The position numbers and the translations under genes were made by a program. From Vitrella brassicaformis CCMP3155 (Eukaryota; Protista; Chromerida): a DNA stretch of 64,000 nucleotides. Below, piece by piece: positions 1 through 39,020 of this stretch. Below the pieces are notes generated by a model. The model was not told the origin of the DNA, did no database searches, and worked only from the letters and a program-made list of their open reading frames with translations. The stretch lies in the NCBI GenBank assembly GCA_001179505.1, contig CDMY01000259.1:62001-126000 (forward strand). The letters are read 5' to 3'. Position 1 is the first letter of the stretch; every line of letters begins with the position of its first letter.

Positions 1-28
1 GGTATCCCTCCCTGTTTATTTGCTACAG

Positions 29-3000
29 GCAGATGACGGGCTCCTCGTCTGGTGCCACGATGAAGCTGTCGGGTGCGGCTCCGTGTGACATGTTCCACCT
101 GCTGGCTGCTCACGCCACGCTTCAGGCCGACTACGACAAGGCGCAGCAGGTGCTGCTGCACGGCTACACGACCGTCCAGCAGCTGTGGACACGCCTCTCG
201 CCGCTCGCACTCCCCGCCCACCACTCGCTGGTCAGCAGCATCGCCCTCCTGCGTGAGCTGGAGCACTTTCTCCACTTCATGACGGGCAAGAGCGTCCCCG
301 GCACCAAGGTCGTCAAGGTGGACCACCCTGGGCAGGTCGACAGAGGGGTGCAGTGCCTCGAGTGGCTGGAGCAGCGGTGTGACGCCACCAGCCTCTCCTT
401 CACCTTCGACCCCTTCGTCGCATGGGCCGATATGGGCATGCTCCGCTGCTTGGGGGTGCAATACCACAATGGCGTCGTCACTGGCAAGGGGCTGCCGGAG
501 GGGCAGAGGGTGGTGGACCTCGACGAGCGGCAGAAAAAGATGACGGCCCGCATCCACTTTAGTGTGGGGTCGGCCGCTCGCAAGCTGGGCAACCTGGAGG
601 GCGCGAAGGCGCTGATGGCCAAATCGTTAAGCATTCACAAGGACAATAGCAACCCGCTGATGCCCAAGGAGACCATCAAGACCTTGCTCAAGGAGGCAGA
701 CCTCCAGGAGGACCTCGCCAAAGTGGCACAGGTGAGTGAGTGATGGGAGACTGACCAGCAAGACGCGCAAGCCGCCTGCTCGTCTGTCTCCCCTGCCATG
801 CATTATGTGTGTGTGCGCTGTGCCCTGTGTTGTTTGTCATCAGTGCCTGACGAAGGTCGCGGGCGGTATCGCCAACAATGACCCCACCACACACCCCGAG
901 CTCCACACGGCTTTCCGCCTTATCAAGCTGCGCTGCCTGCTCACCCAGAACTCCATCAACATCCGACGGGATTCGATGCCCGAGGACCCCCGACCCCTCT
1001 GGCAAGACCTCGTGGACACGGCCAAATTCCAGCTAATCAGGACAGACGGCGGCCACACCGACACACAGGCCATGATCGACCTCCAGGATGCTGCCAGCCC
1101 AGGTCAGTCCGGTACGAAGCTCCACGGCGCCGCGAGCTGTGCCAAGGCCCTGCTGCAGCTGGCGGACGGAGCGGATCAGCTGCTGCGGCACTATGAAGAG
1201 AGGGAGGTGGTCGAGGGGCCATGGACGGCCGACGCCCGGAAGGCACAGACCTTCTGTGTCCTCAAGCTGCTGCACGGCGGGGAGGGGGTCGGCTCCCGCA
1301 GATTCGAGCGGGCACATGCGCAGCTGCCCCGTCTGCTGGAGATGCTCGCGACGCATGGCAGCGATGTGTCGGACATATGGGCGCATTTCCGTCCCTTGCT
1401 GCCGGTGCATCTCTATCTGGGTTGGCTCAACCAGCTGCTGAGCTGGGTGCCTCGGCTCGAGCGTGTGGGGCAGGGTGAGGCCTGGCGGGAGGTCTTGAGC
1501 AAAATCGCTGAGGCCTACCCGCAGGCACTCTTCTACCCGCTGCAGGTGCGCAGCGCAATACCTACAACAGACAGAGACGACAGAGAAATGCTCACACGTT
1601 CCGTTCCCGGCTGATGTGTGGGTGCAGGTGAGTGCCGAGGCGGCCCCCAAGAGCTCTCTGCTGCAGGAGCTTCTCGCCATGATGAGGCGGCAGCGTCCCC
1701 TCCTCGTGTCCTTCTCACAAGCCATCGAGTGCCTCATGGTGCCCGAACTGCGCGCAGTCGGACTCTTCCTGAATGATATTCTCACACACCTCGCCCTAAT
1801 GACCAAGGCCAAGTCGGGAGATGCCAGGGACAAGGTCAGCCCGGCACACGACAGCCCGACGGCCCATCCTGGTCACACAAGCAGTATTTCTGCCATGTCA
1901 TGGGTTCAGGCAGGTGACGAGGCCCGGAGGAAGGAGCTGTGGGAGGGTTTTGTCAAGTCGTGCGCGATGCCGCAGCAGCACTTCGACCAGATCGCGGGCC
2001 GTGAGGGTGCAGGACTGGGCAACGACCAGCTGGTCTTCTCAAAGGGGCTCAAAACCGTCAGCAATGCACACGAACAAAGCACCTCCGTGTTCACATGCCG
2101 TCTTCCTGTTCGTTCATTGCTGCAGAAAGTCGCTATGGCCCTCAGAGTCCAGTCCCTCCCCTCCTCCCCCTCCGCCCTGCTCCAGACCCTCAGCACAGCA
2201 TTCATGAAGCTCAACCCACACCAGGCACACCAGGTGGTGGACAAACTCATACGGGAGATCAACACAGAGAGTCACAAGAAGAAGCTCCAGTACCAGGACA
2301 AGCGCAACACAGAGGACGTGTGCGGCTGGCTGACGCGGGGCGACGGGTACTCAGCGGCCCTCGAGAAGCGGGCGTGGGGCGAGCGGAATGAGCGGGGGCT
2401 GCTGGAGGTGCCCGGCCAGTACGGCGCTGGGCTGAGGGCCCCTGACACAACCACCCACGTCAAGGTCGTCAGATTCGACACTCAGGTGAAGTCCGCCTGC
2501 CGGAGGCGAGGCCGCAGCGACTGTCTGTTGTATCTGTTCGTGTGTGTGTGTGTGTGTGTGCAGGTGCGTGTGTTGGCGTCGAAGCAACGTCCCATGAAGC
2601 TGGTGCTGCACGGCAACGACGAGCGGGAGTACCCCTTCCTGGCCAAGGGGGGAGACGACCTCAGACTCGACCAACGCATCCAGCAGCTCTTCCAAGCCAT
2701 CAACCGGGTGCGCAAGAGCTGCATGGCATCCATCTCTTGTGTGTGGTGTGAAGGCATGGATGGCCCTCTTCCCTTCCTCCCTCCCTGCTGCTCAGATGCT
2801 GTCATCGACGTCGTCTCTGTCAATCCGCACCTACTCGGTCATCCCCATGACCTCCCAGCACGGGCTGCTGCAGTGGGTCTCACAGACAGAGCCGCTCAAG
2901 GGTGTCCTGGAGGAGCAGGCCAGGGTGGATCGACAACGACTTGCCAGCGACGAGAATGCCGCACAGGACGCCGCGCAAGCCAAGAGCCCGTATGTGCAGG

Positions 3001-4319
3001 CCGCTGAGTTCTTCTCGGGCAATCTGGTCGATGTGCAGCGGAAGCGGAAAGAGAGAGACCTCGGGGGGCGCAGGGTGGCCAAATGGAATGACATATACAA
3101 GGGCATATTCGAGCTGACCCGTCAAGAAATCCACGAGAACTACATCAAGACATGCGAGTGAGCGAGCGAGGGAGGGAGGGAGGGAGGGAGGGAAGGGCAC
3201 GAGGTGCCAACATGGAAAATGACTCTGCTGTGTGTGGTTCCTGCAGGCGTATGCCGTCCGATTTGTTGCGGAAGCGACTGTGGGAGTCGAGTCTGACCCC
3301 GGATGCGTTCTTCGTCCTGCGCAAGAACTTCTGCATCTCACTGGGGGCCTTCAACGCGGCGGCATATGTGCTGGGCGTCGGCGACAGGCACCCCGAGAAC
3401 TTCCTACTCGACACGCAGAACGGCGAGGTCACACAGCAGACACGCAAGCAACAAGAGGCATGGGATCCCTCTGTGGTGAATGCAATGCCTGTGCTGCAGG
3501 TGGTGGGTATCGACTTTGGCTATTCCTTCAGCACGGGCATCCGGATGCTCCCCATCCCCGAGCTGGTGCCCTTCCGCCTCACCCCAAACCTCGTCGGAGT
3601 GGCCTGGCCCATCGAGTCCGCCCAGGGCAGCGGCACCCTGCTCAACACACTCATCGACACACTCACCGTCATGCGCGCCGACCAGGCCGCCCTCACCTCG
3701 TTGTGTTCGATCTTCATCAACGAGCCTCTGGTGGAGTGGCAGCAGAAGGACGGCAAGAGGGACATGATGGACGAGGGCGGCGTGGGGGCCGACGGTGGCG
3801 ATGGGGTGGAGGGAGCGGGTGTGGCCGTGGCCAAGGGCCGGCTGGAGATGGTGCAGCGGAAGCTGAGAGGCGAGGCGCCCACTGCCATACTCATCGACGA
3901 ACTCATGCACACCGTTCCTGTAAGTAAACAACAAGCACACCTGGCTGCATCAACCAACTGCTTATGAATGAGATACCTTACTGCTGCAGAATTCTGCTGT
4001 TGCCGCCATGGTGGAGTCCCGCGGCAAGCAGCCGCAGCGGACCAGCAGCAGGGCGGCCTCACACTGGCAGGACCTCCAGGACATCGTGACGGGCGAGAGG
4101 GCCAACTCTCTGCGATCTGAACTGCTCCGCGACGCCCTCACGAGGCGGCATAGGGGGCCATCCGCAGGGACCAAGGGGGCCACAGCGATGAATGGCGACG
4201 GTGTGACAGGGAAGGGCGTGGTGCTGAGTGTGTCGGATCAGGCGCGGAGCCTGGTCGATCTGGCGACGGACAGCAACGTGCTGGGCAGGGCGTTCATCGG
4301 ATGGGCGCCCTGGGTGTGA
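29..4319 (+). CDS. PRKDC: DNA-dependent protein kinase catalytic subunit (PIKK family), 3' part: FAT, kinase and FATC domains; multi-exon, 5'-truncated by window edge
   Basis: Spliced exons give LLEVPGQY..HVKVVRFD, VLASKQRPMKLVLHGNDEREYPFLAKGGDDLRLDQRIQQLF, VLGVGDRHPENFLLD, GIDFGYSF..LPIPELVPFRLT, and a FATC end LSVSDQARSLVDLATDSNVLGRAFIGWAPWV* (stop 4317-4319). These match DNA-PKcs-specific motifs as I recall them ([58 protein letters not shown]). Confidence 0.93.
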
Positions 4320-12896: not shown

Positions 12897-15370
12897 TCAT
12901 CCATCCATCGATCGTGTCCTCACGTGTATGTCGAATGAGGCCCCAGCAAAGGGGCTCCGCAGCAGGGGATGCCGGTAGTACGTATCTGGGATGCACACAC
13001 ACACAGCACAGCAGGGACGTCCGTAAGGTGACCAATTCCTGCCTGCCGTCTGTGTCTCCTACCGGTCATTCGGTATCCCGTCTTGTAGTTCTGCGCCTGC
13101 CCCTCCTTCTGCCCATCCTTCTCCTTGTGGCCCTCCTTGCTGTCGCCCTTGCTCTTGTTTGTGGCCTCGTCGCTGGGTGACTGGTGACTCTTCTCGTCAC
13201 GATGCGTCCGGTAGTCTTTGGAGAACTTCTTATGGTTTTGGTAGAAGTCGGTCGACAGCTGCTGGGCGGCCCAGGGGATGTTGTCGAGGGCCGGCACCAC
13301 ATACGGATGACGCAGCGCATCGGCAGCGGTAAGACGGCGCTTCGGGTCTGACGAGACACGACAACAAGGTGGTTCTCCTGGCGAGTCACGACTTTAGTCG
13401 GGTTTACTTGGTTCGAGGAGTTTCTTGATGAGGTCTCTGCACTCCTTGGGCGCGTGTCTGCATGCCTTTGTGGAGTACTGGCCCTTGAGGATCGCCCGCG
13501 CGACGTCATGGTCCTCGAACCCTGCACCAAGCACATTCCGGTCTGGTAGACAGCCACCCATGTGTCAGCATCCACGCTGAGGTGAGTGTGACCGACCTGT
13601 GAAAGGCGTGAAGCCCGTTATGATCCAAAAAAGGGTCACGCCTGCATTGGCAAAGGAATATCATGGAATTGGCTGTCGTCTCGTGTGTCTCTGGTGGATG
13701 TTTGCATACCGACGCTCCACATGTCAGCCTTGCGGCCGTAGTCGCCTGCCAACACCTCGGGCGCCAAATACGGCAGAGACCCAGAACTGAAGACACATAC
13801 ACACACACGTACACCAAGTGTAGCCACCAAGTCCTGATGATCTTTGGAGAAGGCCCCATTCGCAACGTCCCTTACGTGTCTGAGAGTCCAGCATGTTCGC
13901 ACTCGGTTTCGACAGCCAGGCCAAAGTCCGACAGCACCAGGCGGCCCTCATTAGTGACAAAGAAATTCTGGGGCTTGATGTCTCTGTGTCATCCATCCCA
14001 TCCATGGGAGGACAGCAGGAAAATGACACATGGATGCCTCATTCCAGTCATGTTTGATCCCACACCTGTGGCAGATGTTGAGTGAGTGGAGGTGATGGAC
14101 GGCCAGCAGAATGTGCGCCGTGGCCTCTGTCACTTTGGATGCAGGCCAGAAGAGGCAATCCACGCTCTCCAGGTCAGCGTCGTACCGCTCCATGACTGCA
14201 CGTAAGGGAACGGAACACACACCGTACAGGAGAGGCCAGACGGGTACCTGCTTGTCGGAAGCTCTACTTACCAATGTAGCATGACGCGTCGTATAGGAAG
14301 ACGTCGTGGACTAGGACGATGTTGGGGTGCTGCGCGAGCTTCAGCAGGTACACCTCCCGGTGGATCTCCTCCGGTGTCATCTTGGACTGACGACGCTGAC
14401 GCCCCTTGATGTACCTGACGCAGAAAGACAAAAAGTGTCACCGTATAAAGCCAGGACTGCAGAGATGTGGGTATCTGTCCGATTCACCTCAGGTAGGGGT
14501 TAAGCGACTTTCTGTTTTTCTTCTCCTCGGCAGTGGCGGCCTCGTCTTCCTCAATGGCTGTCTCGGATATCTGCGTGATCTTCACTGCCTGATGGGAGAC
14601 AGAGACAGACGTACACATGGACTATACCGGTCTGCATGCTCTATCTGCGTGGGTCCGCTCACCCTTCTTATCTTTGCTTCTCCCACAATGGCTCGAGGAT
14701 TCCTCAGGATGGCCTCACGGCAGGTGGAGAAGCCGCCCTCTCCCAGTTTCTTGCCCAAGATGTACTTGTCATTGAAACCTATTCGCAAAGGACGAAGATA
14801 CTACGTGTGCCTTTTGCTTGCCGTGCGTATGTTCTGCCTACCTGTCAGCTGTCCATTCTTGTCGGTCAGCCGCCGGAAGACGTCTGTCAGAGAGAACCTC
14901 CGTCTGTACTTGCCTCTCCCAGGGCTCCCCTCGGGACTCGCCCCCTCAGGGCCGCCTGGGCTCGTCGGCATCGTCGACATGTCACCCTCGCTCACTGGGC
15001 TCAAAAACGAACCCCGGCCACCGACAGAGCTGGCCACTGAGCCGCGCCGCATGCCCCCACCACCCTCCTTGATGCTCTCGTTGGACCTCTTGCGGAACAT
15101 GTTCATCAGCCGGGAGGCCAGAGATCCCTCTCTTGGACGGTTGGCCCTCCGAGCAGCGTGCTCCACCGGAGAGCCGGGCATACTGCCAAGCCGCCCGACA
15201 CCGCCCTTCTCAGTGACACCCTCATGCCAGGCGTGTGCCGATTTTCCAGAGTCATTGGTCGAGGGGGCCTGATGCGCACTATCTGTTGGGGGAGCGACGG
15301 TGGCAGCGACGCTGTGGCGGCGCTTCTCCTTGGCTGCGGAGGCAAAGTAGGACGAGGGCACCTCAGACAT
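12897..15370 (-). CDS. Ser/Thr protein kinase, CAMK-group-like, with long disordered N-terminus
   Basis: Spliced motifs: YILGKKLGEGGFSTCREA, HPNIVLVHDVF, LHSLNICHR/DIKPQNFF, LSDFGLA, GSLPYLAPEVLAGDYGRKADMWSVG, CRDLIKKLLEP/DPKRRLTAADALRHPY. The position of the last exon (stop) is uncertain. Confidence 0.88.
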
Positions 15371-16347
15371 CTTGCTAATGGGGCTTCAAATGGGGCTGCG
15401 GATGGCGAGAGTATTGGTGTGTGGCTGCTGCCGACTCACATACAGGGCGATAGCATCGTTTGGCAAGGACCGGGCGTGCAAAAGGAAAAGGGGTGAAGAG
15501 AGAGAAATGTGGGCCGCAGTCGAGAATTTCGCGATGGGGGCGAGACGCGATCCTTTTGGAAGATTTCGAACCTTTGATGCGATAGCCTGGATGCCTTTCC
15601 GCTCATATTAGAGCACAGCTTCAGCTGCCGCAGCCCATTAATCTATTTTCTGACTTCGCAACCCTTCTGCGCGAATCCTATTGTGCGAATCCCAGCGGCT
15701 GAAGGTGGCAGTTGACGGCGAACATCGCGGCGGCCTTGTGGCAGTTCCGCCAACAGGTACTCAAGGTGAAAGGTATGTGACAGACAGACGCCTACACCTG
15801 CATTTGCCCTGATGCAATGATGAATTCGCAGCAATGCGCCACCGTGACGCGAAAGGAACACTGTCAGAGGTGGGCTGGCTGTCCGCATCATTCCGTATGA
15901 CATTGTGCGTCTGTGTCAGTGATGTTAGATGGCCTTTGGGCCCACACTGGCGCGAGCCGCCGAGGAGTCCTTCTGAGCTGGTTTTGCAGGGGCCAGCCGG
16001 TTGCACCTCTTCCCCCGTCTCCTTTGGCGACAAAGAGGAGCTGGAGAGGGAAAGCAAGAGTAAGTAAGAGACACACAGACCGAGAGAATGGCACCATGCA
16101 GAATGAACACTGCCTTGTTCAGTCGTGCTGCCTTGTTCTGCAGTCGAGAACACATCGCTCTAGCTTTGAGCCCGTGATTTGCCATCCGGAAGAAAATCAA
16201 GAGATAGATTCCACAGAAGGTGAGCGAGGGAGGAGTGGAATCATCACCAGACGGGCAGAGGGTGCATGTGTGAAGCAGGACCTTGCCGTGATTTCCTTGA
16301 CGCTTTTGCTGCTGCTTGTGTGGATGCATATCAGGTGCTGCGGCAAC

Positions 16348-19300
16348 ATGAGCCTGCCCATCAGTGGTGTCACACCCCGCAGCACTCTCCGGCGGTGTAC
16401 AAGTGAGCCGCAGCTGGGCAGCCCCCTGCGGAGAGTCCAGTCGGAGGTGGACCGCTACATCCGGTCGGGCAGGCCCCTCCCAGTGCACGACACCCCCCTG
16501 CAGCAACTTGAAGAGATTGCCGCCGCCCTGGGCGCGGCATTCTACGGCCCACTAGGGGAGTCCGTCACATCGACCTCGACGCACAGCATCAAGAACCCTG
16601 ACTGCACCTGCATGGAGTGTTGGGTAAGCAAATCATGGGCGGGGAGGGAGAGAGGGAGGGAGGGAGGGAGGGAGGCTGGGAGGGAGGGATTGCCGGCACC
16701 GATTGCTCGTTTGTCGTGTCATGTTGGTCAGCGGGGCGTTCCTCTCGCCTTCTGCTGCCATACGTCGCCGACCTCGTAGCCAGGCACGCTGCCCGAGGGC
16801 TGGTCCCAGAGATGTCGATCCAGTTGGTCGACCACCTGGTGTTCCCCGAGGGACTGTCGGGCCGGACGGTCTTTGCGGCTGAGCCGCTGAGAGCGGCGGT
16901 GCGGAGTGCGGCCATTTGCCTGTGTAGGCAGATGATGGTACGACTGGTGGATGGGCAGCAGGACAACACATTCCTGACGCAGGTAAGCAAGGAGAGAGTG
17001 TGTTCCCACCCCACGCCCCCCCGCAGCATCACGCATACCAACACGAGGCCGCACACCACCAGCACCACCAGCAGGTGCAGCAGCGTGGTGACGCACAGCC
17101 GCCGCCCGAGCAGGCCTTCCTGGGGAAACATCGGGAGGTGGATACGGGGGATTTCGAGGTCCAGCCGGAGAACGTGAGCTTCCCCATGCCGCCCCTCTGG
17201 CCAAGCGCACTCACATCCCTCTACTCCATCCCGGTACGCATTGAGGAGGAAGTGGGCAGATGAGGCTGAGGTGGTGTGGTGCGTGTTGCAGTATCCCTAT
17301 GACGTGTTGGGCAGGGGAACGTTCGGCATAGTCGTCAAGGCCTACTGCAGGCTTCCAGGGGATCCCGTGGCGATCAAGGTCATATTCCACCTAGACGACC
17401 TGGCCGAAATCCATGTAAGTGTATGAGCAGGTAGGCAGTATACACACAGCGTGACACATCCATCCATGTCTCTCTCTGTGTCGGTCTGCTTGTCTGTATG
17501 TGTGTATGTGTGTGGATGGCATGCATGTGTGCAGGCCCAGGAGGAGATCGACAAGATGAATCAGTTGAGTGAGCATTCGGACCTGGCCAAGCACCGGCTC
17601 ATGGTCACAGCGGAGAACCGCTTTGTGCTGGCCCACTATGTAGTGCTGGGCGTTTCGCCCTTTGCGTCGAGGGGGGAGGTCGAGGATGCGTGGAAAAAGT
17701 GTCGCAAATGGGTGAGGGGCGCACAGCACTCGAGGCGACATCATGCTGTGGGATGGGGCGTGCATGCTGCGCGTGTTTGGGGTGTGCAGGCGCATCCCGA
17801 CCGCAAGATACTGCGGGACGGGATGATATTTTCGTACATGAATACCGCCCAGCAGCTGCTGTTGGATGAGGACAAGAGGGAGGCCTATGACCACAAGAAG
17901 GTACGCACACGCGCTGGAACCCTCACATACACTGCGGGCATATCCATCGTCGGTTTGCTGTGCTGTTGGCGGCTGGCTCCTTTCTGGATGGTGCAGGGTG
18001 TGAGTGAGGCCAACCGTGAGCACATCATTGCTCTCTGGAAACACGATTGCGGCCGTTTCGAGGTGGGCGACACAGAGATCCACACACATCCTACCCATAT
18101 CTACGCACATCCACCCTCCCTTCGTATGGTTGGTTGTCCCTCCAGTTCCTGGTTGAGCAGGAGAAGTTGAAGCCTACCAACACTGCCCAGCCGGTATGTA
18201 CGGGCGCACCGCCCAGCTGCAACCATCACCTTGATCAAAGGCACTGTGGATGGATGTGTGTGTGCTGGTTGTGCACTCCTTCAGGCCGCGGCTAAGCCGC
18301 CCGTGCCGAGTTCAGCTGCCGGCAGTTCGCCCACCAACGGCCGCACCGTGACGCCAAGCCGACTGCAGCTCGTCGTGGTGCCAGCGAAGCCTCCCACCCC
18401 CTCACCGTCCCCCTCCCCCTCCCCCACATCGACTCCCCCTGCTGCCCCTGCACCCACACGCGCCGCACCACAAGTGCAGAAAGCCACGCCATACTTGCCC
18501 CCGACTGCCGTCGCCGCTCACCCCCACCCGAACCCCCACCCTCACCCCATCCGCCACACAGCAGAGCAGCTGCCCTCGCCGGGCTACTACAGGCTGAAGG
18601 CGTCTGTCGAGGAGTGTGAGCGGTCCGGAAGCAGATGTGTAGGCCGCAGGTACATATTGATGAGGGCAGGGCCATCACACACGGCCAACACATCGATGTG
18701 ATGTACGTGTGCGTGGCTGTGTGTGTGTCAGGTATCATTGCGTACCAGATGATTCGGGCAAGGTAGTCACTGGCGGGGCGGCCTACAGGCGGGCAGATGA
18801 GCTGGGCGTGCCCGACATACGATACGACAATGAACACATAGAGGTCCTCCTCCCACCCACATACACACAGACACAGACACAGACAGGGACAGAGACACGT
18901 GTGGATGAATGGATGGATGGATGGATTTGTGTACTGCAGAAGGTGAGGGAGTCGGTGAAGGGCCCCAACTGGCCGCGGCAGGAGCTCTGGGACAAGCTGG
19001 ACCTCGCCACCAAGAAATTCCAGGAGCCGCCCTACAGGTCACTCAACAGCCTTCTCGACTACATCTCGCTCATGCTCGCCTACAGACGAGAACTGCGGCT
19101 CACCGCCCAGGAGGTCCGAACTCAGAAACCTACACGCACACGACCTGACATGACCTGACATGGCATGACATCCATGTGTGCAGCTGGTGGACCCAACGGC
19201 GGAGCACCCCGTGTTCGAGTCGATGCGGGAGGAGATCGCCCGGCTGCTGTCCGGGTGGAGCCCACGGGATCGGTACGAGCCCACGGGATCGGTACAACCT

Positions 19301-19358
19301 GGAGCAGATCACGGCCGTCTTCAACCCCAAGACGCGAGACTTCAAGCCGCGCACATGA
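16348..19358 (+). CDS. chimeric multi-exon protein: lineage-specific domain + kinase N-lobe + J-domain (HPD) + Pro-rich region + kinase subdomain X-XI remnant; last exon frameshifted
   Basis: Exon 17292-17414 encodes VLGRGTFGIVVKAYC..VAIKVIF, followed by AQEEIDKMNQL. Exons 17535-17711 and 17790-17900 encode HYVVLGVSPFASRGEVEDAWKKCRKW/AHPDRK..MNTAQQLLLDEDKREAYD. Later exons give LLDYISLMLAYRRELRLTAQE/LVDP. No HRD/DFG/APE motifs found in between. Confidence 0.65.
19258..19295 (+). repeat. perfect 19-bp tandem duplication (GAGCCCACGGGATCGGTAC x2) causing a frameshift
   Basis: Read directly. The frame before it reads ..RLLSGWSPRDRY. The continuation SPRDRYNLEQITAVFNPKTRDFKPRT* lies in a different frame (ORFs 19178..19489 vs 19176..19358). 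Confidence 0.9.
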
Positions 19359-19751
19359 GCACTCAAGGGGCCCGTGCCGCCCTTGTGCCCCCCCACACCC
19401 ATCCCCACACCGCGACCGTCAGCCGGCCCCCTCAGCCCTCCCATGGTGCGCCAGAGCCCCCCTCGCGGTCCAACCAAACTCGCACGTAACGCCAAATCTG
19501 TCCGGTAGGCAGAGGGAGGGAGGGAGGGAGGGAGGGAGAGAGGAAGGGTGCACACAAGCGGAAAAATGAAATCAAGAGTGCAATAAGCTCCCCTTCCCCC
19601 TTTCTCCGTCTGTTTTTGCTGCAGGGGTCTGCGCCTTCGGAGGGACACGACGACGCCCGAGGACGGCTGAGAGGGTAAAAGCGGTTGTTCCACAGAAACA
19701 AAGGGAGAAACCGTCTGTGAGTGCATGTGTGTTCTGCAGGTGGGTTGGCAA

Positions 19752-37658: not shown

Positions 37659-39020
37659 ATGATGACGGACGAGGAGACCAACGCCATGATGCCGAGCGAC
37701 GAGGAGATGGCCGCCATCATCGAGCAGCATCGACGGGACAAGGAGAACCTCAGGCCCGAGGACGTCGCTGCGGTGCGGAGGCTCATCGCCCTCCACCGCG
37801 ACCCTCGGGCCACCGACGAGGAAGTCCTACGAGCGAAGCAAGAGATACCGATGGAGGTAAGGAGAGGGACGAGGGATGAGGGCCGAAGAGACTTGGGAAG
37901 AGACGCAGGAGAAGACGCTAAGGAGTCATTGTGGCACTGCTGCATATATTCCTTCCAGGTGTACCGCACCGTCTGCCATGGGCTGGAGCGCGACGAGATC
38001 GAAGACCTCACCAAGCTCCTGATCAGGAACTGCCGCCATGCCGCCTGTAAGTAGAGATGGAGAAGGAATGGATGACATGACTTTCTACGACATACTTTCC
38101 CTTCTTCCCTTTGTCTGTCTTCCCCAGCCAACATTGCCGCTGAGCGAGGCGTCGCCCTGCCGACGTCTCCCCACCCCTTTCTCGCCACACACGCCCCTCC
38201 CCCTGCCCCCGCCGTCTCCGACGCCCCTCCCTCTCCNNNNNNNNNNNNNNNNNNNNNNNNNNNNNNNNNNNNNNNNNNNNNNNNNNNNNNNNNNNNNNNN
38301 NNNNNNNNNNNNNNNNNNNNNNNNNNNNNNNNNNNNNNNNNNNNNNNNNNNNNNNNNNNNNNNNNNNNNNNNNNNNNNNNNNNNNNNNNNNNNNNNNNNN
38401 NNNNNNNNNNNNNNNNNNNNNNNNNNNNNNNNNNNNNNNNNNNNNNNNNNNNNNNNNNNNNNNNNNNNNNNNNNNNNNNNNNNNNNNNNNNNNNNNNNNN
38501 NNNNNNNNNNNNNNNNNNNNNNNNNNNNNNNNNNNNCCCCTCCCTCTCCCCCACCGCCACACACGCCCCTCCCCCTGCCCCCACCGCCACGTACGTCCCT
38601 CCCTCCGTCCCCACCGCCACATACGCCCCTCCACCTCCCCCCACCGCCACGTACGCCACTCCCCCCGGCCCCATCGCCACCTATGCTCCTCCCCCCGTCC
38701 CCATCGCCGCATACGCCACTGCCCCCGTCCCCATCGCCGCATACGCCCCTCCCCCCGTCCCCCTGGTCCACCCCGCAGCCCGGTTCGTCCACTCCAGCCA
38801 CCGATTTGTGCCCGTTCCCCGGTTCGTGCCCTCCCCGCTGCTCTCGCCGGCCATGAAGGAGGACGACAAGTGCTGGTGTGTTGAGATTGGGGAGTGGGTG
38901 GTGAGGGGGCTGGTGTGTGCGTATGAGTGTGTGTGTAACGGCGTGCGGTGCTTTGCGATGTGGGTGTGGGATGGGGTGAAATGGGTGGCCACGTGTGGCA
39001 CGTGTCGGCTGTCTGGCAGG
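37659..39020 (+). CDS. 'EDIAA..HRDP' family copy 4 with expanded 10-aa Pro/Ala/Tyr repeats; spans assembly gap
   Basis: MMTDEETNAMMPSDEE..PEDVAAVRRLIALHRDPRATDEEVLRAKQEIPME / VYRTVCHGLERDEIEDLTKLLIRNCRHAA / NIAAERGVALPTSPHPFLATHAPPPAP.. [gap] ..PTATYAPPPP repeats..DKCWC..MWVWDGVKWVATCG. That frame stays open to 39389, running into a repeat. Confidence 0.6.
38237..38536. other. assembly gap (300 N) inside a C-rich minisatellite
   Basis: Run of N, flanked on both sides by CCCCTCCC-type repeat sequence. Confidence 0.99.
38551..38760 (+). repeat. 30-bp minisatellite, 7 visible units, encoding PTATHAPPPA / PTATYVPPSV / PTATYAPPPP / PTATYATPPG / PIATYAPPPV / PIAAYATAPV / PIAAYAPPPV
   Basis: Units start at 38551, 38581, 38611, 38641, 38671, 38701 and 38731 with CCA(C/T)CGCC(A/G)C. 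This frame is continuous with ORF 38808..39389. Confidence 0.92.

What the first reader, a model, noticed from the sequence alone, without database searches (positions are those of the whole stretch)
17292..19358. Kinase 'shell' with its catalytic core replaced by a J-domain
Seen: Gly-loop (LGRGTFGIV), VAIK and an alphaC-like EEIDKMNQL are followed within the next exon by a J-domain with intact HPD (HYVVLGVSPFASRGEVEDAWKK..AHPDR..EAYD). After a Pro-rich linker comes a subdomain-XI-like LLDYISLMLAYRRELRLTAQEL. No HRD, DFG or APE motif is visible in between. Established: J-domains recruit and activate Hsp70 through HPD. Inference: a J-domain inserted into, and replacing, a kinase C-lobe, giving a possible pseudokinase co-chaperone. 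I know no such architecture.
Basis: partly seen in the sequence, partly recalled or inferred. Interest (0 to 1): 0.72.

Follow-up and report, generated by a model that had tools for sequence, protein, structure and literature searches.

The report
J-domain gene spliced into kinase remnant
One gene of the alga Vitrella brassicaformis is a mosaic in which most of a lineage-specific J-domain (Hsp70 helper) gene sits between the first 57 residues and a possible last helix of a former protein kinase, an oddity seen only in this genome and with no proof yet that it is expressed.

Summary
The locus is the annotated Vitrella brassicaformis CCMP3155 gene CEL97939.1 / A0A0G4ELP3 (705 aa).

- **Kinase start:** Exon A encodes kinase strands β1-β3 with the Gly-loop and VAIK (Pkinase E about 5e-6, below the Pfam cut-off).
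- **J-domain:** The next two exons encode a J-domain with HPD that passes the Pfam cut-off.
- **No hidden core:** No HRD, DFG or APE exon exists in any + frame of 17238-19500.

The reading needs three corrections.

- **What was inserted:** The insert is not a bare J-domain. It is nearly a whole member of a small chromerid J-protein family, running from that family's first codon (Met there, Leu286 here) through a conserved helix, the Pro-rich linker and a YRL motif, with the family's intron positions.
- **How much kinase is left:** Only residues 229-285 are clearly kinase-derived. The subdomain-XI-like tail rests on one PDB hit (CK2α helix αI, E 0.43) and has no Pfam support. This is not a kinase shell and cannot fold as a pseudokinase.
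- **Signs of neglect:** A perfect 19-nt tandem duplication shifts the frame of the last 24 codons. No relative shares the architecture. The only splice seen in public contigs lies on the opposite strand.

Most likely it is a lineage-specific chimeric J-protein, functional or drifting. Interest is modest.

The parts
16348..17233 (+). Exons 1-3 of the annotated gene (16348-16618, 16732-16937, 17027-17233), encoding residues 1-228. This is a helical, His/Gln-rich N-terminal region of unknown kind.
   Evidence: tblastn of P0001 on the window and border check. Coding score is positive in frame. No Pfam family, no Atlas lead, and no relative of residues 1-302.
17292..17414 (+). Exon A, residues 229-269: kinase β1-β3 with the Gly-loop GRGTFG and the VAIK lysine.
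   Evidence: Pkinase 17.6 bits for the exon alone. The exon's PDB search listed 174 hits at E up to 10; all 60 shown are kinases matched at their Gly-loop/VAIK region, the best being CMGC kinases at E about 0.005.
17535..17582 (+). 5' part of exon B, residues 270-285: αC-like stretch ending in an 'HxD/N'-like turn. This is the last clearly kinase-like sequence.
   Evidence: Adding it raises the Pkinase score from 17.6 to 25-26.6 bits, profile positions 6-76. It has no counterpart in J-family relatives.
17583..17711 (+). 3' part of exon B, residues 286-328: the J-family N-terminus and J-domain helices I-II. Codon 17583-17585 (CTG, Leu286) aligns with the initiator Met of relatives.
   Evidence: In alignment A1, column 9 has Leu in P0001 and Met in P0002 and both P0008 repeats. 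L002 has an ATG there. The MMETSP 'complete' ORF P0007 starts there.
17790..17900 (+). Exon C, residues 329-365: the HPD loop and J-domain helices III-IV.
   Evidence: DnaJ PF00226 36.1 bits over 303-362, cut-off 27.8. DNAJA1 J-domain E 2.5e-5. The intron before HPD is at the same place in L002, L003 and L004.
17997..18062 (+). Exon D, residues 366-387: the family-specific helix 'GV[ST]EA.R...W' after the J-domain.
   Evidence: Conserved in P0003, P0007, P0008 and L002.
18146..18193 (+). Candidate exon E (16 codons, in phase), which is not in the public model.
   Evidence: GT-AG borders and coding score 0.82. P0003 carries a similar stretch (WFLKEDQEIP) at the same place, where annotated P0001 has a gap.
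18285..18649 (+). Exon F, residues 388-510: the Pro-rich linker ending in a GYYRL motif, still J-family derived.
   Evidence: L002 shares 52% identity over 23-25 residues of the linker. P0008 has GSYRL after its linker.
18732..18843 (+). Exon G, residues 510-546: origin undecided. By eye it resembles both a kinase P+1/APE remnant (YRRADEL) and the family's W-D-x-x-H module.
   Evidence: No Pfam or PDB support. There is a weak BLAST match to P0008, E 0.61.
18940..19216 (+). Exon H (18940-19113) and the start of exon I (19184-19216), residues 547-615. This is a possible kinase C-lobe end, with the helix αI motif R-L-T-A-x-E and then H-P-x-F.
   Evidence: The sole PDB hit for residues 540-630 is CK2α 294-332, the end of its kinase domain, at E 0.43. 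A motif written after the fact occurs in 3 of 200,000 shuffles of P0001. There is no Pfam hit.
19258..19295 (+). A perfect 19-nt tandem duplication (2 x 19 nt) that shifts the reading frame near the C-terminus.
   Evidence: Exact repeat found by script. It is present without gaps in contigs of runs X1, X3 and X5.
19296..19358 (+). Former last codons and stop (19356-19358), now out of frame. The present frame runs on to the stop at 19487-19489.
   Evidence: The old frame scores 0.81 for coding. The annotated protein ends in the shifted frame.
19130..19207 (-). A 78-nt skip in one contig of run X5, with GT..AG ends on the minus strand. It is a possible antisense spliced RNA over the 3' end of the gene.
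   Evidence: Joint 19127>19206, ends CT..AC at cut +2, side 172, depth 9.6. The minus-strand context is ggg|gtgctc ... gtgcgtgtag|g.

Best explanation
This is a lineage-restricted chimeric gene. A DNA copy of a chromerid-specific J-protein gene, running from its first codon through its Pro-rich linker with its introns, lies inside what was a CMGC-like protein kinase gene. It replaces everything from the end of helix αC to, at most, the last helices of the C-lobe.

If spliced as annotated, the product has an unknown 228-residue head, kinase strands β1-β3 plus αC, and a complete J-domain with HPD. These are followed by the family helix, the linker and a 150-residue tail that may end in kinase helix αI. 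It cannot phosphorylate and cannot adopt a kinase fold, because the hinge, αD-αF, the catalytic loop and DFG are all missing.

The only part with a predictable activity is the J-domain. If the protein works, it works as a class C J-domain co-chaperone that stimulates Hsp70 ATP hydrolysis through HPD. The flanks would at most supply a binding or localisation surface.

- **Shown:** the sequence anatomy, the family relationship and the absence of a kinase core.
- **Inferred:** the order of events, expression as one mRNA, and Hsp70 recruitment.
For: - **Identity and model:** P0001 is CEL97939.1, and the same exon chain is the public model.
- **Kinase start:** Pkinase covers residues 233-302 against profile 6-76 only, E 5e-6 to 1e-5. 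Exon A's PDB search gave 174 hits, and all 60 shown are kinases matched at their N-terminal Gly-loop/VAIK stretch.
- **J-domain:** it scores above the Pfam cut-off and aligns to the DNAJA1 J-domain with HPD and the basic helix II.
- **Family origin:** P0003, P0008/P0007 and the environmental contig L002 share the 17 residues before the J-domain, the J-domain, the GV.EA helix and the linker. They also share the intron before HPD and the intron after the J-domain. Their Met aligns with Leu286.
- **No kinase in relatives:** none of the relatives shows kinase sequence, and L002 has no N-lobe exon in the 916 nt upstream.
- **No hidden core:** no kinase exons lie hidden in other frames.
- **Coding signal:** coding scores support every exon.
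Against: - No RNA evidence for the + strand junctions was obtainable. Contigs of the runs offered keep the introns, and the one clean splice is on the other strand.
- The C-terminal kinase remnant is statistically weak: E 0.43 for a single hit and no Pfam hit.
- The parent kinase was not found. The word searches could not see proteins under 388 aa, which is the usual size of CMGC kinases.
- The J-part is only about 45% identical to its nearest known relatives, so the age of the fusion is unknown.
- The 19-nt frameshifting duplication hints at relaxed constraint.
- The AF2 single-sequence model is unusable, pLDDT 38.7.
Confidence: 0.5

Rival explanations
1. The gene is a neutral or decaying chimera. 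The fusion is an evolutionary accident that is annotated as a gene but makes little or no useful protein, and the open frames simply have not yet decayed.
For: - It is a singleton: no protein with this architecture appears among 1.84 billion representatives, in the word searches, or in JGI metagenomes.
- A perfect and therefore recent 19-nt duplication destroys a tail that still scores strongly as coding.
- It is present in two studies' contigs.
- Run X5, which looks RNA-like because of a canonical minus-strand splice, has zero depth over exons 1-C apart from repeats. It shows only unspliced or antisense cover of the 3' half.
Against: - Eleven or twelve exons keep open frames, canonical splice sites and positive coding scores.
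- The J-domain keeps HPD and its structural residues although it is only about 45% identical to its nearest relative.
- The Gly-loop and VAIK are still near consensus.
- The kind of run X5 is not on record.
Confidence: 0.3
2. The model is an artefact that joins two transcription units. One unit would be an upstream gene or relic (exons 1-3 and A). The other would be an independent J-protein gene whose product starts at an internal Met (Met277 or Met292, 11-26 residues before the J-domain).
For: - Family relatives start 17 residues before the J-domain.
- In-frame Met codons lie close to that point.
- The public model is an Augustus prediction (PMC4501334).
- The same annotation apparently fused two tandem J copies into P0008, while an MMETSP ORF starts at the second copy.
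- An in-phase A/B junction is expected by chance one time in three.
Against: - The family's initiator position is CTG here, not ATG.
- Exon A ends with a strong GTAAGT donor, exon B begins after a typical TG-rich CAG acceptor, and both are phase 0.
- The 48 nt of exon B upstream of Leu286 score as coding and add 8-9 bits to the kinase match.
- Augustus used stranded intron hints.
Confidence: 0.12
3. One reading: a functional 'pseudokinase co-chaperone' in which the kept kinase pieces are selected. The N-lobe/αC surface would bind a kinase partner (a cyclin-like protein or Cdc37/Hsp90) and the J-domain would bring Hsp70 to it.
For: - The Gly-loop, VAIK lysine and αC acidic residues are unusually well kept for a fragment without a catalytic partner.
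- Kinase-like sequence may survive at both ends in the right order, and both ends point to the CMGC group.
- Precedents exist for kinase fragments as binding modules (KIND, PMC2064798) and for kinase plus J-domain in one protein (GAK, PMC7054993).
Against: - Only about 57 residues of N-lobe remain. β4-β5, the hinge and αD-αF are absent, so no known kinase surface is complete.
- The C-terminal match is weak.
- There is no conservation in any other organism, and no expression data.
Confidence: 0.08

Closest known systems
Vitrella J-protein family: CEM35631.1 (P0003, 362 aa), CEL96736.1 (P0008, 675 aa, two copies), and environmental contig ena:ERZ893784:k147_1930096 (L002)
   Same: The shared parts are the 17 residues before the J-domain, the HYVVLGVSPFA start, HPD, the helix GV[ST]EA.R..W, the Pro-rich linker and the YRL motif. 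The intron just before HPD and the intron just after the J-domain are also shared. Identity is 33-45% over the shared 100 columns.
   Different: The relatives show no kinase-like sequence. P0003 and P0008 end in a W.GEGEDG.Y..LTKW module that this gene lacks, and this gene's tail is not similar to theirs. Here the family's initiator codon is CTG and lies inside an exon.
GAK / auxilin-2 (DNAJC26)
   Same: It has a protein-kinase sequence and a J-domain in one polypeptide, and the J-domain recruits Hsc70 (PMC7054993, PMC2821301; domain order from established knowledge).
   Different: GAK has a complete, active kinase domain at the N-terminus, PTEN-like and clathrin-binding regions in the middle, and the J-domain at the extreme C-terminus. 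Here the J-segment interrupts the kinase and the catalytic core is gone. No sequence relationship beyond the two Pfam families was seen.
[quoted passage not shown]
   Same: A fragment of a kinase fold is kept without catalysis and used as a protein-binding module (PMC2064798, PMC5338823).
   Different: KIND is a whole C-lobe that folds on its own and is conserved across animals. Here the clear remnant is a partial N-lobe, the C-lobe trace is at most one to three helices, and nothing is conserved outside one genome. No Pfam KIND hit was found.
CMGC protein kinases (CDK, DYRK/HIPK, CK2)
   Same: Exon A is closest to HIPK3, DYRK1A and CDK2. The C-terminal motif's only PDB match is the CK2α αI helix. 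By eye, a 'G-P-x-W' stretch precedes it, as in CMGC kinases.
   Different: Profile positions 77-263 of Pkinase are unmatched. There is no HRD, DFG, APE or αF, and the score is below the Pfam cut-off.

Membership tests
J-domain proteins (Pfam PF00226 DnaJ) | Match to the J-domain profile above the curated cut-off | tested here: met
   36.1 bits over residues 303-362 against a cut-off of 27.8. It also scores 30.7 bits when read through the intron.
J-domain proteins (Pfam PF00226 DnaJ) | HPD tripeptide between helices II and III, with a basic helix II | tested here: met
   HPD is at 330-332. 'KKCRKW' precedes it and aligns with 'RKLALKY' of the DNAJA1 J-domain.
J-domain proteins (Pfam PF00226 DnaJ) | Stimulates Hsp70 ATPase in an HPD-dependent way | not testable with these tools
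   This needs a biochemical assay with an HPD>QPD control.
Eukaryotic protein kinase domain (Pfam PF00069), including pseudokinases | Profile match above the curated cut-off, covering both lobes | tested here: not met
   25.3-26.7 bits against a cut-off of 31.7. Only profile positions 6-77 of 263 are matched, in a single stretch even at E<=10.
Eukaryotic protein kinase domain (Pfam PF00069), including pseudokinases | Gly-loop GxGxxG and VAIK lysine (subdomains I-II) | tested here: met
   GRGTFG is at 235-240 and VAIK at 254-257. They align to the same motifs of HIPK3 and DYRK1A.
Eukaryotic protein kinase domain (Pfam PF00069), including pseudokinases | Catalytic loop (HRD), DFG, APE and the αE/αF core (subdomains VIb-IX) | tested here: not met
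   There is no such motif in a kinase context in any + frame. No Pfam kinase hit was found in 27 stop-free segments of 17238-19500. By eye there is only a degenerate 'YRRADEL'.
Eukaryotic protein kinase domain (Pfam PF00069), including pseudokinases | Subdomain XI (αI helix with the invariant Arg) closing the domain | tested here: inconclusive
   The only PDB hit for residues 540-630 is CK2α 294-332, at E 0.43. There is no Pfam stretch. The motif is rare in shuffles, but it was written after seeing the sequence.
GAK/auxilin family | Complete NAK-type kinase, PTEN-like region, clathrin-binding region and a C-terminal J-domain | tested here: not met
   Pfam finds only a partial Pkinase and DnaJ, and the J-domain is internal. 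The domain order of GAK is taken from PMC7054993 and established knowledge.
Chromerid 'HYVVLGVSPFA' J-protein family (defined here) | J-domain with that start, GV[ST]EA helix, Pro-rich linker, and shared intron positions before HPD and after the J-domain | tested here: met
   Alignment A1 and tblastn on L002, L003 and L004.

The most novel reading that the evidence does not exclude
The retained kinase N-lobe piece (Gly-loop, VAIK, αC) and the αI-like tail are under selection as a decoy or docking surface. The protein would imitate a half-folded kinase client or a cyclin-binding αC face, and would use its built-in J-domain to load Hsp70 onto a kinase partner or onto the kinase-chaperoning machinery. 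That would make it a dedicated 'kinase-shaped' co-chaperone with no known counterpart.
Probability: 0.06. Interest if true: 0.65.

Novelty: new variant of a known kind. Interest (0 to 1): 0.3.

Why it matters
If the chimera is expressed, it is a clean natural example of a new protein made by dropping one intron-bearing gene into another. The junction can be placed to the codon: the donor's start codon became Leu286. It would also be a J-domain protein whose targeting parts are scraps of a kinase. That makes it a useful case for how class C J-proteins acquire client-binding regions, and for how far a kinase can be whittled down and still be kept. If it is not expressed, it is a caution about automatic models in the compact Vitrella genome. 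Either way it does not change what is known about kinases or Hsp70.

Tried and rejected
- **Hidden catalytic exons:** I looked for them with a motif scan of three frames and Pfam on every stop-free + segment of 24 aa or more in 17238-19500. None was found.
- **RNA proof of the junctions:** the one run search and one read-laying run gave only contigs, mostly DNA-like with introns kept. There is no sense-strand junction evidence either way.
- **Relatives with the same architecture:** I ran the representative search on exons B-D, word searches with 176 aa, residues 1-302 and residues 226-302, and JGI metagenomes. Only the gene itself and J-family members came back. The word searches cannot see proteins under 388 aa, so the parent kinase may have been missed.
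- **A kinase alignment for profile-profile comparison of the tail:** no kinase sequences could be obtained by reference. This step was dropped.
- **Structure:** the AF2 single-sequence model has pLDDT 38.7 and the Atlas model 0.44. Both are too poor for a fold search. The Atlas feature and structure leads are uninformative.
- **Tail derived from the J-family's C-terminal module:** no significant similarity to P0003 was found.
- **Paralogues in the window:** none.
- **The 'HRDAKP' in an alternative frame of exon F:** rejected as chance, since it has no kinase context and no DFG.
- **The upstream kinase at the P0008 locus as parent:** it has no similarity to this gene.
- **Literature for a J-domain/pseudokinase fusion:** nothing relevant.
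Full report
**What is there**

The window is eukaryotic, about 59% G+C, with short GT-AG introns rich in TG. The finding lies in a multi-exon + strand gene. I read the exons by eye and checked them in a script. Every exon has a canonical acceptor and donor and scores as coding in the proposed frame, while the introns do not.

The representative search with exons B-D, given by reference and read through two in-frame introns, returned a 705-aa protein at 98% identity. This is P0001: CEL97939.1 / UniProt A0A0G4ELP3, 'J domain-containing protein' of Vitrella brassicaformis CCMP3155, contig CDMY01000259.1.

The public model equals mine, with two differences. It skips a 16-codon exon (18146-18193), and it uses the exon 1-3 borders 16348-16618, 16732-16937 and 17027-17233.

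Exons were searched by reference, and full-length searches used the database's own record P0001. I joined exons once inside a script, only to read the translation.

**Checking the observation**

- **Exon A (17292-17414):** it carries GRGTFG and VAIK. Alone it scores Pkinase 17.6 bits. Its PDB search listed 174 hits at E up to 10; all 60 shown are kinases matched at their Gly-loop/VAIK region, best HIPK3, DYRK1A and CDK2 at E about 0.005.
- **Residues 226-302:** these reach 26.6 bits, E 4.8e-6, on profile positions 6-75 of 263. That is below the 31.7-bit cut-off because it is a fragment.
- **The J-domain:** it is real, at 36.1 bits against a 27.8 cut-off. It aligns with the DNAJA1 J-domain at E 2.5e-5, with HPD at 330-332 and a basic helix II.
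- **The missing core:** no HRD, DFG or APE stands in a kinase context in any frame. Pfam finds no kinase signal in any of the other stop-free + strand segments of 17238-19500. The refutation 'hidden exons complete an ordinary kinase' therefore fails.

**What the inserted part is**

The J-domain is not a generic one. Only seven proteins in 1.84 billion representatives reach E 0.001 with exons B-D. The informative ones are:

- two Vitrella paralogues, P0003 and P0008, the latter matched by an MMETSP ORF, P0007;
- an environmental contig from a Vitrella-like organism, L002.

Shared features:

- the start HYVVLGVSPFA and the 17 residues before it;
- HPD and the post-J helix GV[ST]EA.R..W;
- a Pro-rich linker, 52% identical over 23-25 residues between this gene and L002;
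- a YRL motif.

The intron just before HPD is at the same place in L002, L003 and L004, and so is the intron just after the J-domain in L004. The J-part therefore came from a DNA-level copy of a family member, not from a retrocopy or a lone domain.

In L002 an ATG stands 17 codons before HYVV. The MMETSP 'complete' ORF starts at the same position. In alignment A1 that Met column holds Leu286 of this protein, which is codon CTG at 17583-17585.

The HMM and PDB alignments run on to residue 302, as if through β4-β5 to the hinge. Residues 286-302 are in fact the J-family's own N-terminus. Clearly kinase-derived sequence is only residues 229-285, meaning β1-β3 and an αC-like helix. The junction lies inside exon B.

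**The C-terminal side**

Exon F is family-derived to its end. Exon G is ambiguous. By eye it can be read as a P+1/APE remnant (YRRADEL) or as the family's W-D-x-x-H module, and no tool supports either reading.

- **For:** the only PDB match for residues 540-630 is the end of the CK2α kinase domain, residues 294-332, at E 0.43. CK2α is a CMGC kinase, like the best N-lobe matches.
- **For, but weak:** a pattern for subdomain XI plus the closing H-P-aromatic occurs in 3 of 200,000 shuffles of the protein. In 203,000 residues of six-frame translation it otherwise picks out only the true neighbouring kinase. I wrote that pattern after seeing the sequence.
- **Against:** Pfam finds no second kinase stretch even at E 10.
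- **Neutral:** the tail is not similar to the tails of P0003 or P0008.

I rate a kinase origin of the tail as likely but unproven.

**Signs about function**

For function:

- All frames and splice sites are intact.
- The J-domain keeps its key residues at only about 45% identity to its nearest relatives.
- The Gly-loop and VAIK are near consensus.

Against function:

- A perfect 19-nt tandem duplication (19258-19276 and 19277-19295) shifts the frame. The former last 24 codons, which still score 0.81 for coding, and the former stop at 19356-19358 are replaced by a 70-residue Pro/Gln-rich tail ending at 19489.
- The duplication is in contigs of three runs from two studies, so it is not an assembly slip.
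- No protein with this architecture, and no relative of residues 1-302, was found anywhere. L002 has no N-lobe exon in the 916 nt upstream of its J exon.
- The runs offered were all contigs of unrecorded kind, and most keep the introns.
- Run X5 covers only 18040-19668 at low depth, unspliced with respect to the + strand. It carries one clean 78-nt skip whose ends are GT..AG on the minus strand. That suggests an antisense RNA rather than the sense mRNA.

The public model comes from Augustus with stranded intron hints (PMC4501334). Whether hints supported these junctions is unknown.

**Mechanism**

The product lacks the hinge, αD-αF, the catalytic loop and DFG. It can neither phosphorylate nor fold as a kinase, so 'pseudokinase' is too generous. 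The one predictable activity is HPD-dependent stimulation of Hsp70, which follows from established J-domain biology and is not tested here.

My estimates:

- about 0.5 that it is an expressed, lineage-specific class C J-protein whose flanks are incidental or at most a docking surface;
- 0.3 that it is a drifting chimera of no use;
- 0.12 that the model joins two transcription units, with a J-only protein starting at Met277 or Met292;
- under 0.1 that the kinase scraps are a selected decoy or docking module.

**Comparison with known kinds**

- **GAK/auxilin-2:** it shows that kinase plus J-domain in one chain is not new (PMC7054993, PMC2821301). There the kinase is whole and the J-domain terminal.
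- **KIND domains:** they show that kinase fragments can become binding modules (PMC2064798, PMC5338823). They are whole C-lobes and widely conserved.
- **The nested order here:** N-lobe piece, J-protein, possible αI has no counterpart in the searches I could run.

I class it as a new variant of a known kind (a J-domain protein). Interest is modest because it is a singleton without expression evidence and with a fresh frameshift.

**Limits**

- The parent kinase could not be sought among proteins under 388 aa.
- No kinase alignment was available for a profile-profile test of the tail.
- Structure prediction without an alignment failed (pLDDT 38.7).

Noticed in passing
window 19130-19207 (minus strand): One contig of run X5 skips 78 nt with GT..AG ends on the minus strand. 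X5 covers only 18040-19668 and keeps the + strand introns. This suggests an unannotated antisense spliced RNA over the 3' half of the gene.
   Followed up: partly
window 18146-18193: A 16-codon in-phase exon (FLVEQEKLKP...) is missing from the public model CEL97939.1. It has good splice sites, a high coding score and a counterpart in paralogue CEM35631.1, so it is probably a missed or alternative exon.
   Followed up: partly
L004 718-4440 and 5001-9205: At the locus of the paralogue CEL96736.1, a 690-aa protein kinase gene lies directly upstream on the same strand. It is not similar to this gene's kinase piece. The 675-aa J model looks like two tandem copies (87.6% identical) fused by the annotation, because an MMETSP ORF starts at the second copy's Met.
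   Followed up: partly
window 13000-15385 (minus strand): The neighbouring gene is an ordinary multi-exon Ser/Thr kinase (HRDIKPQN, DFG, APE, RRLTAADALRHPYV; 592 aa in the annotation). It is transcribed divergently from this gene across a spacer of about 1 kb, and it is unrelated to the remnant.
   Followed up: partly
window 1-4000: Long + strand ORFs with PIKK-type motifs (GDRHPENFLL, DFGYSF) suggest the 3' part of a DNA-PKcs/ATM-like kinase gene.
   Followed up: no
window 38237-38536: There is an assembly gap of exactly 300 N, flanked by a Gly/Trp/Arg-type tandem repeat region.
   Followed up: no
window 16654-16673, 19514-19537, 3170-3193 and 18911-18926: (GGGA)n and (GGAT)n microsatellites recur in introns and UTRs. 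Read-laying skipped several of them as repeats, and they inflate depth in all runs.
   Followed up: no
L002 1923-1991 and 2242-2316: The end of the environmental contig repeats the linker-coding stretch in inverted orientation. This is probably an assembly fold-back, so the 3' part of that gene is unknown.
   Followed up: no
window 18305-18362: Contigs of runs X1 and X4 carry a variant with 8 substitutions within 60 nt of the Pro-rich exon F, beside the reference form. It could be an allele or a collapsed paralogous low-complexity stretch.
   Followed up: no
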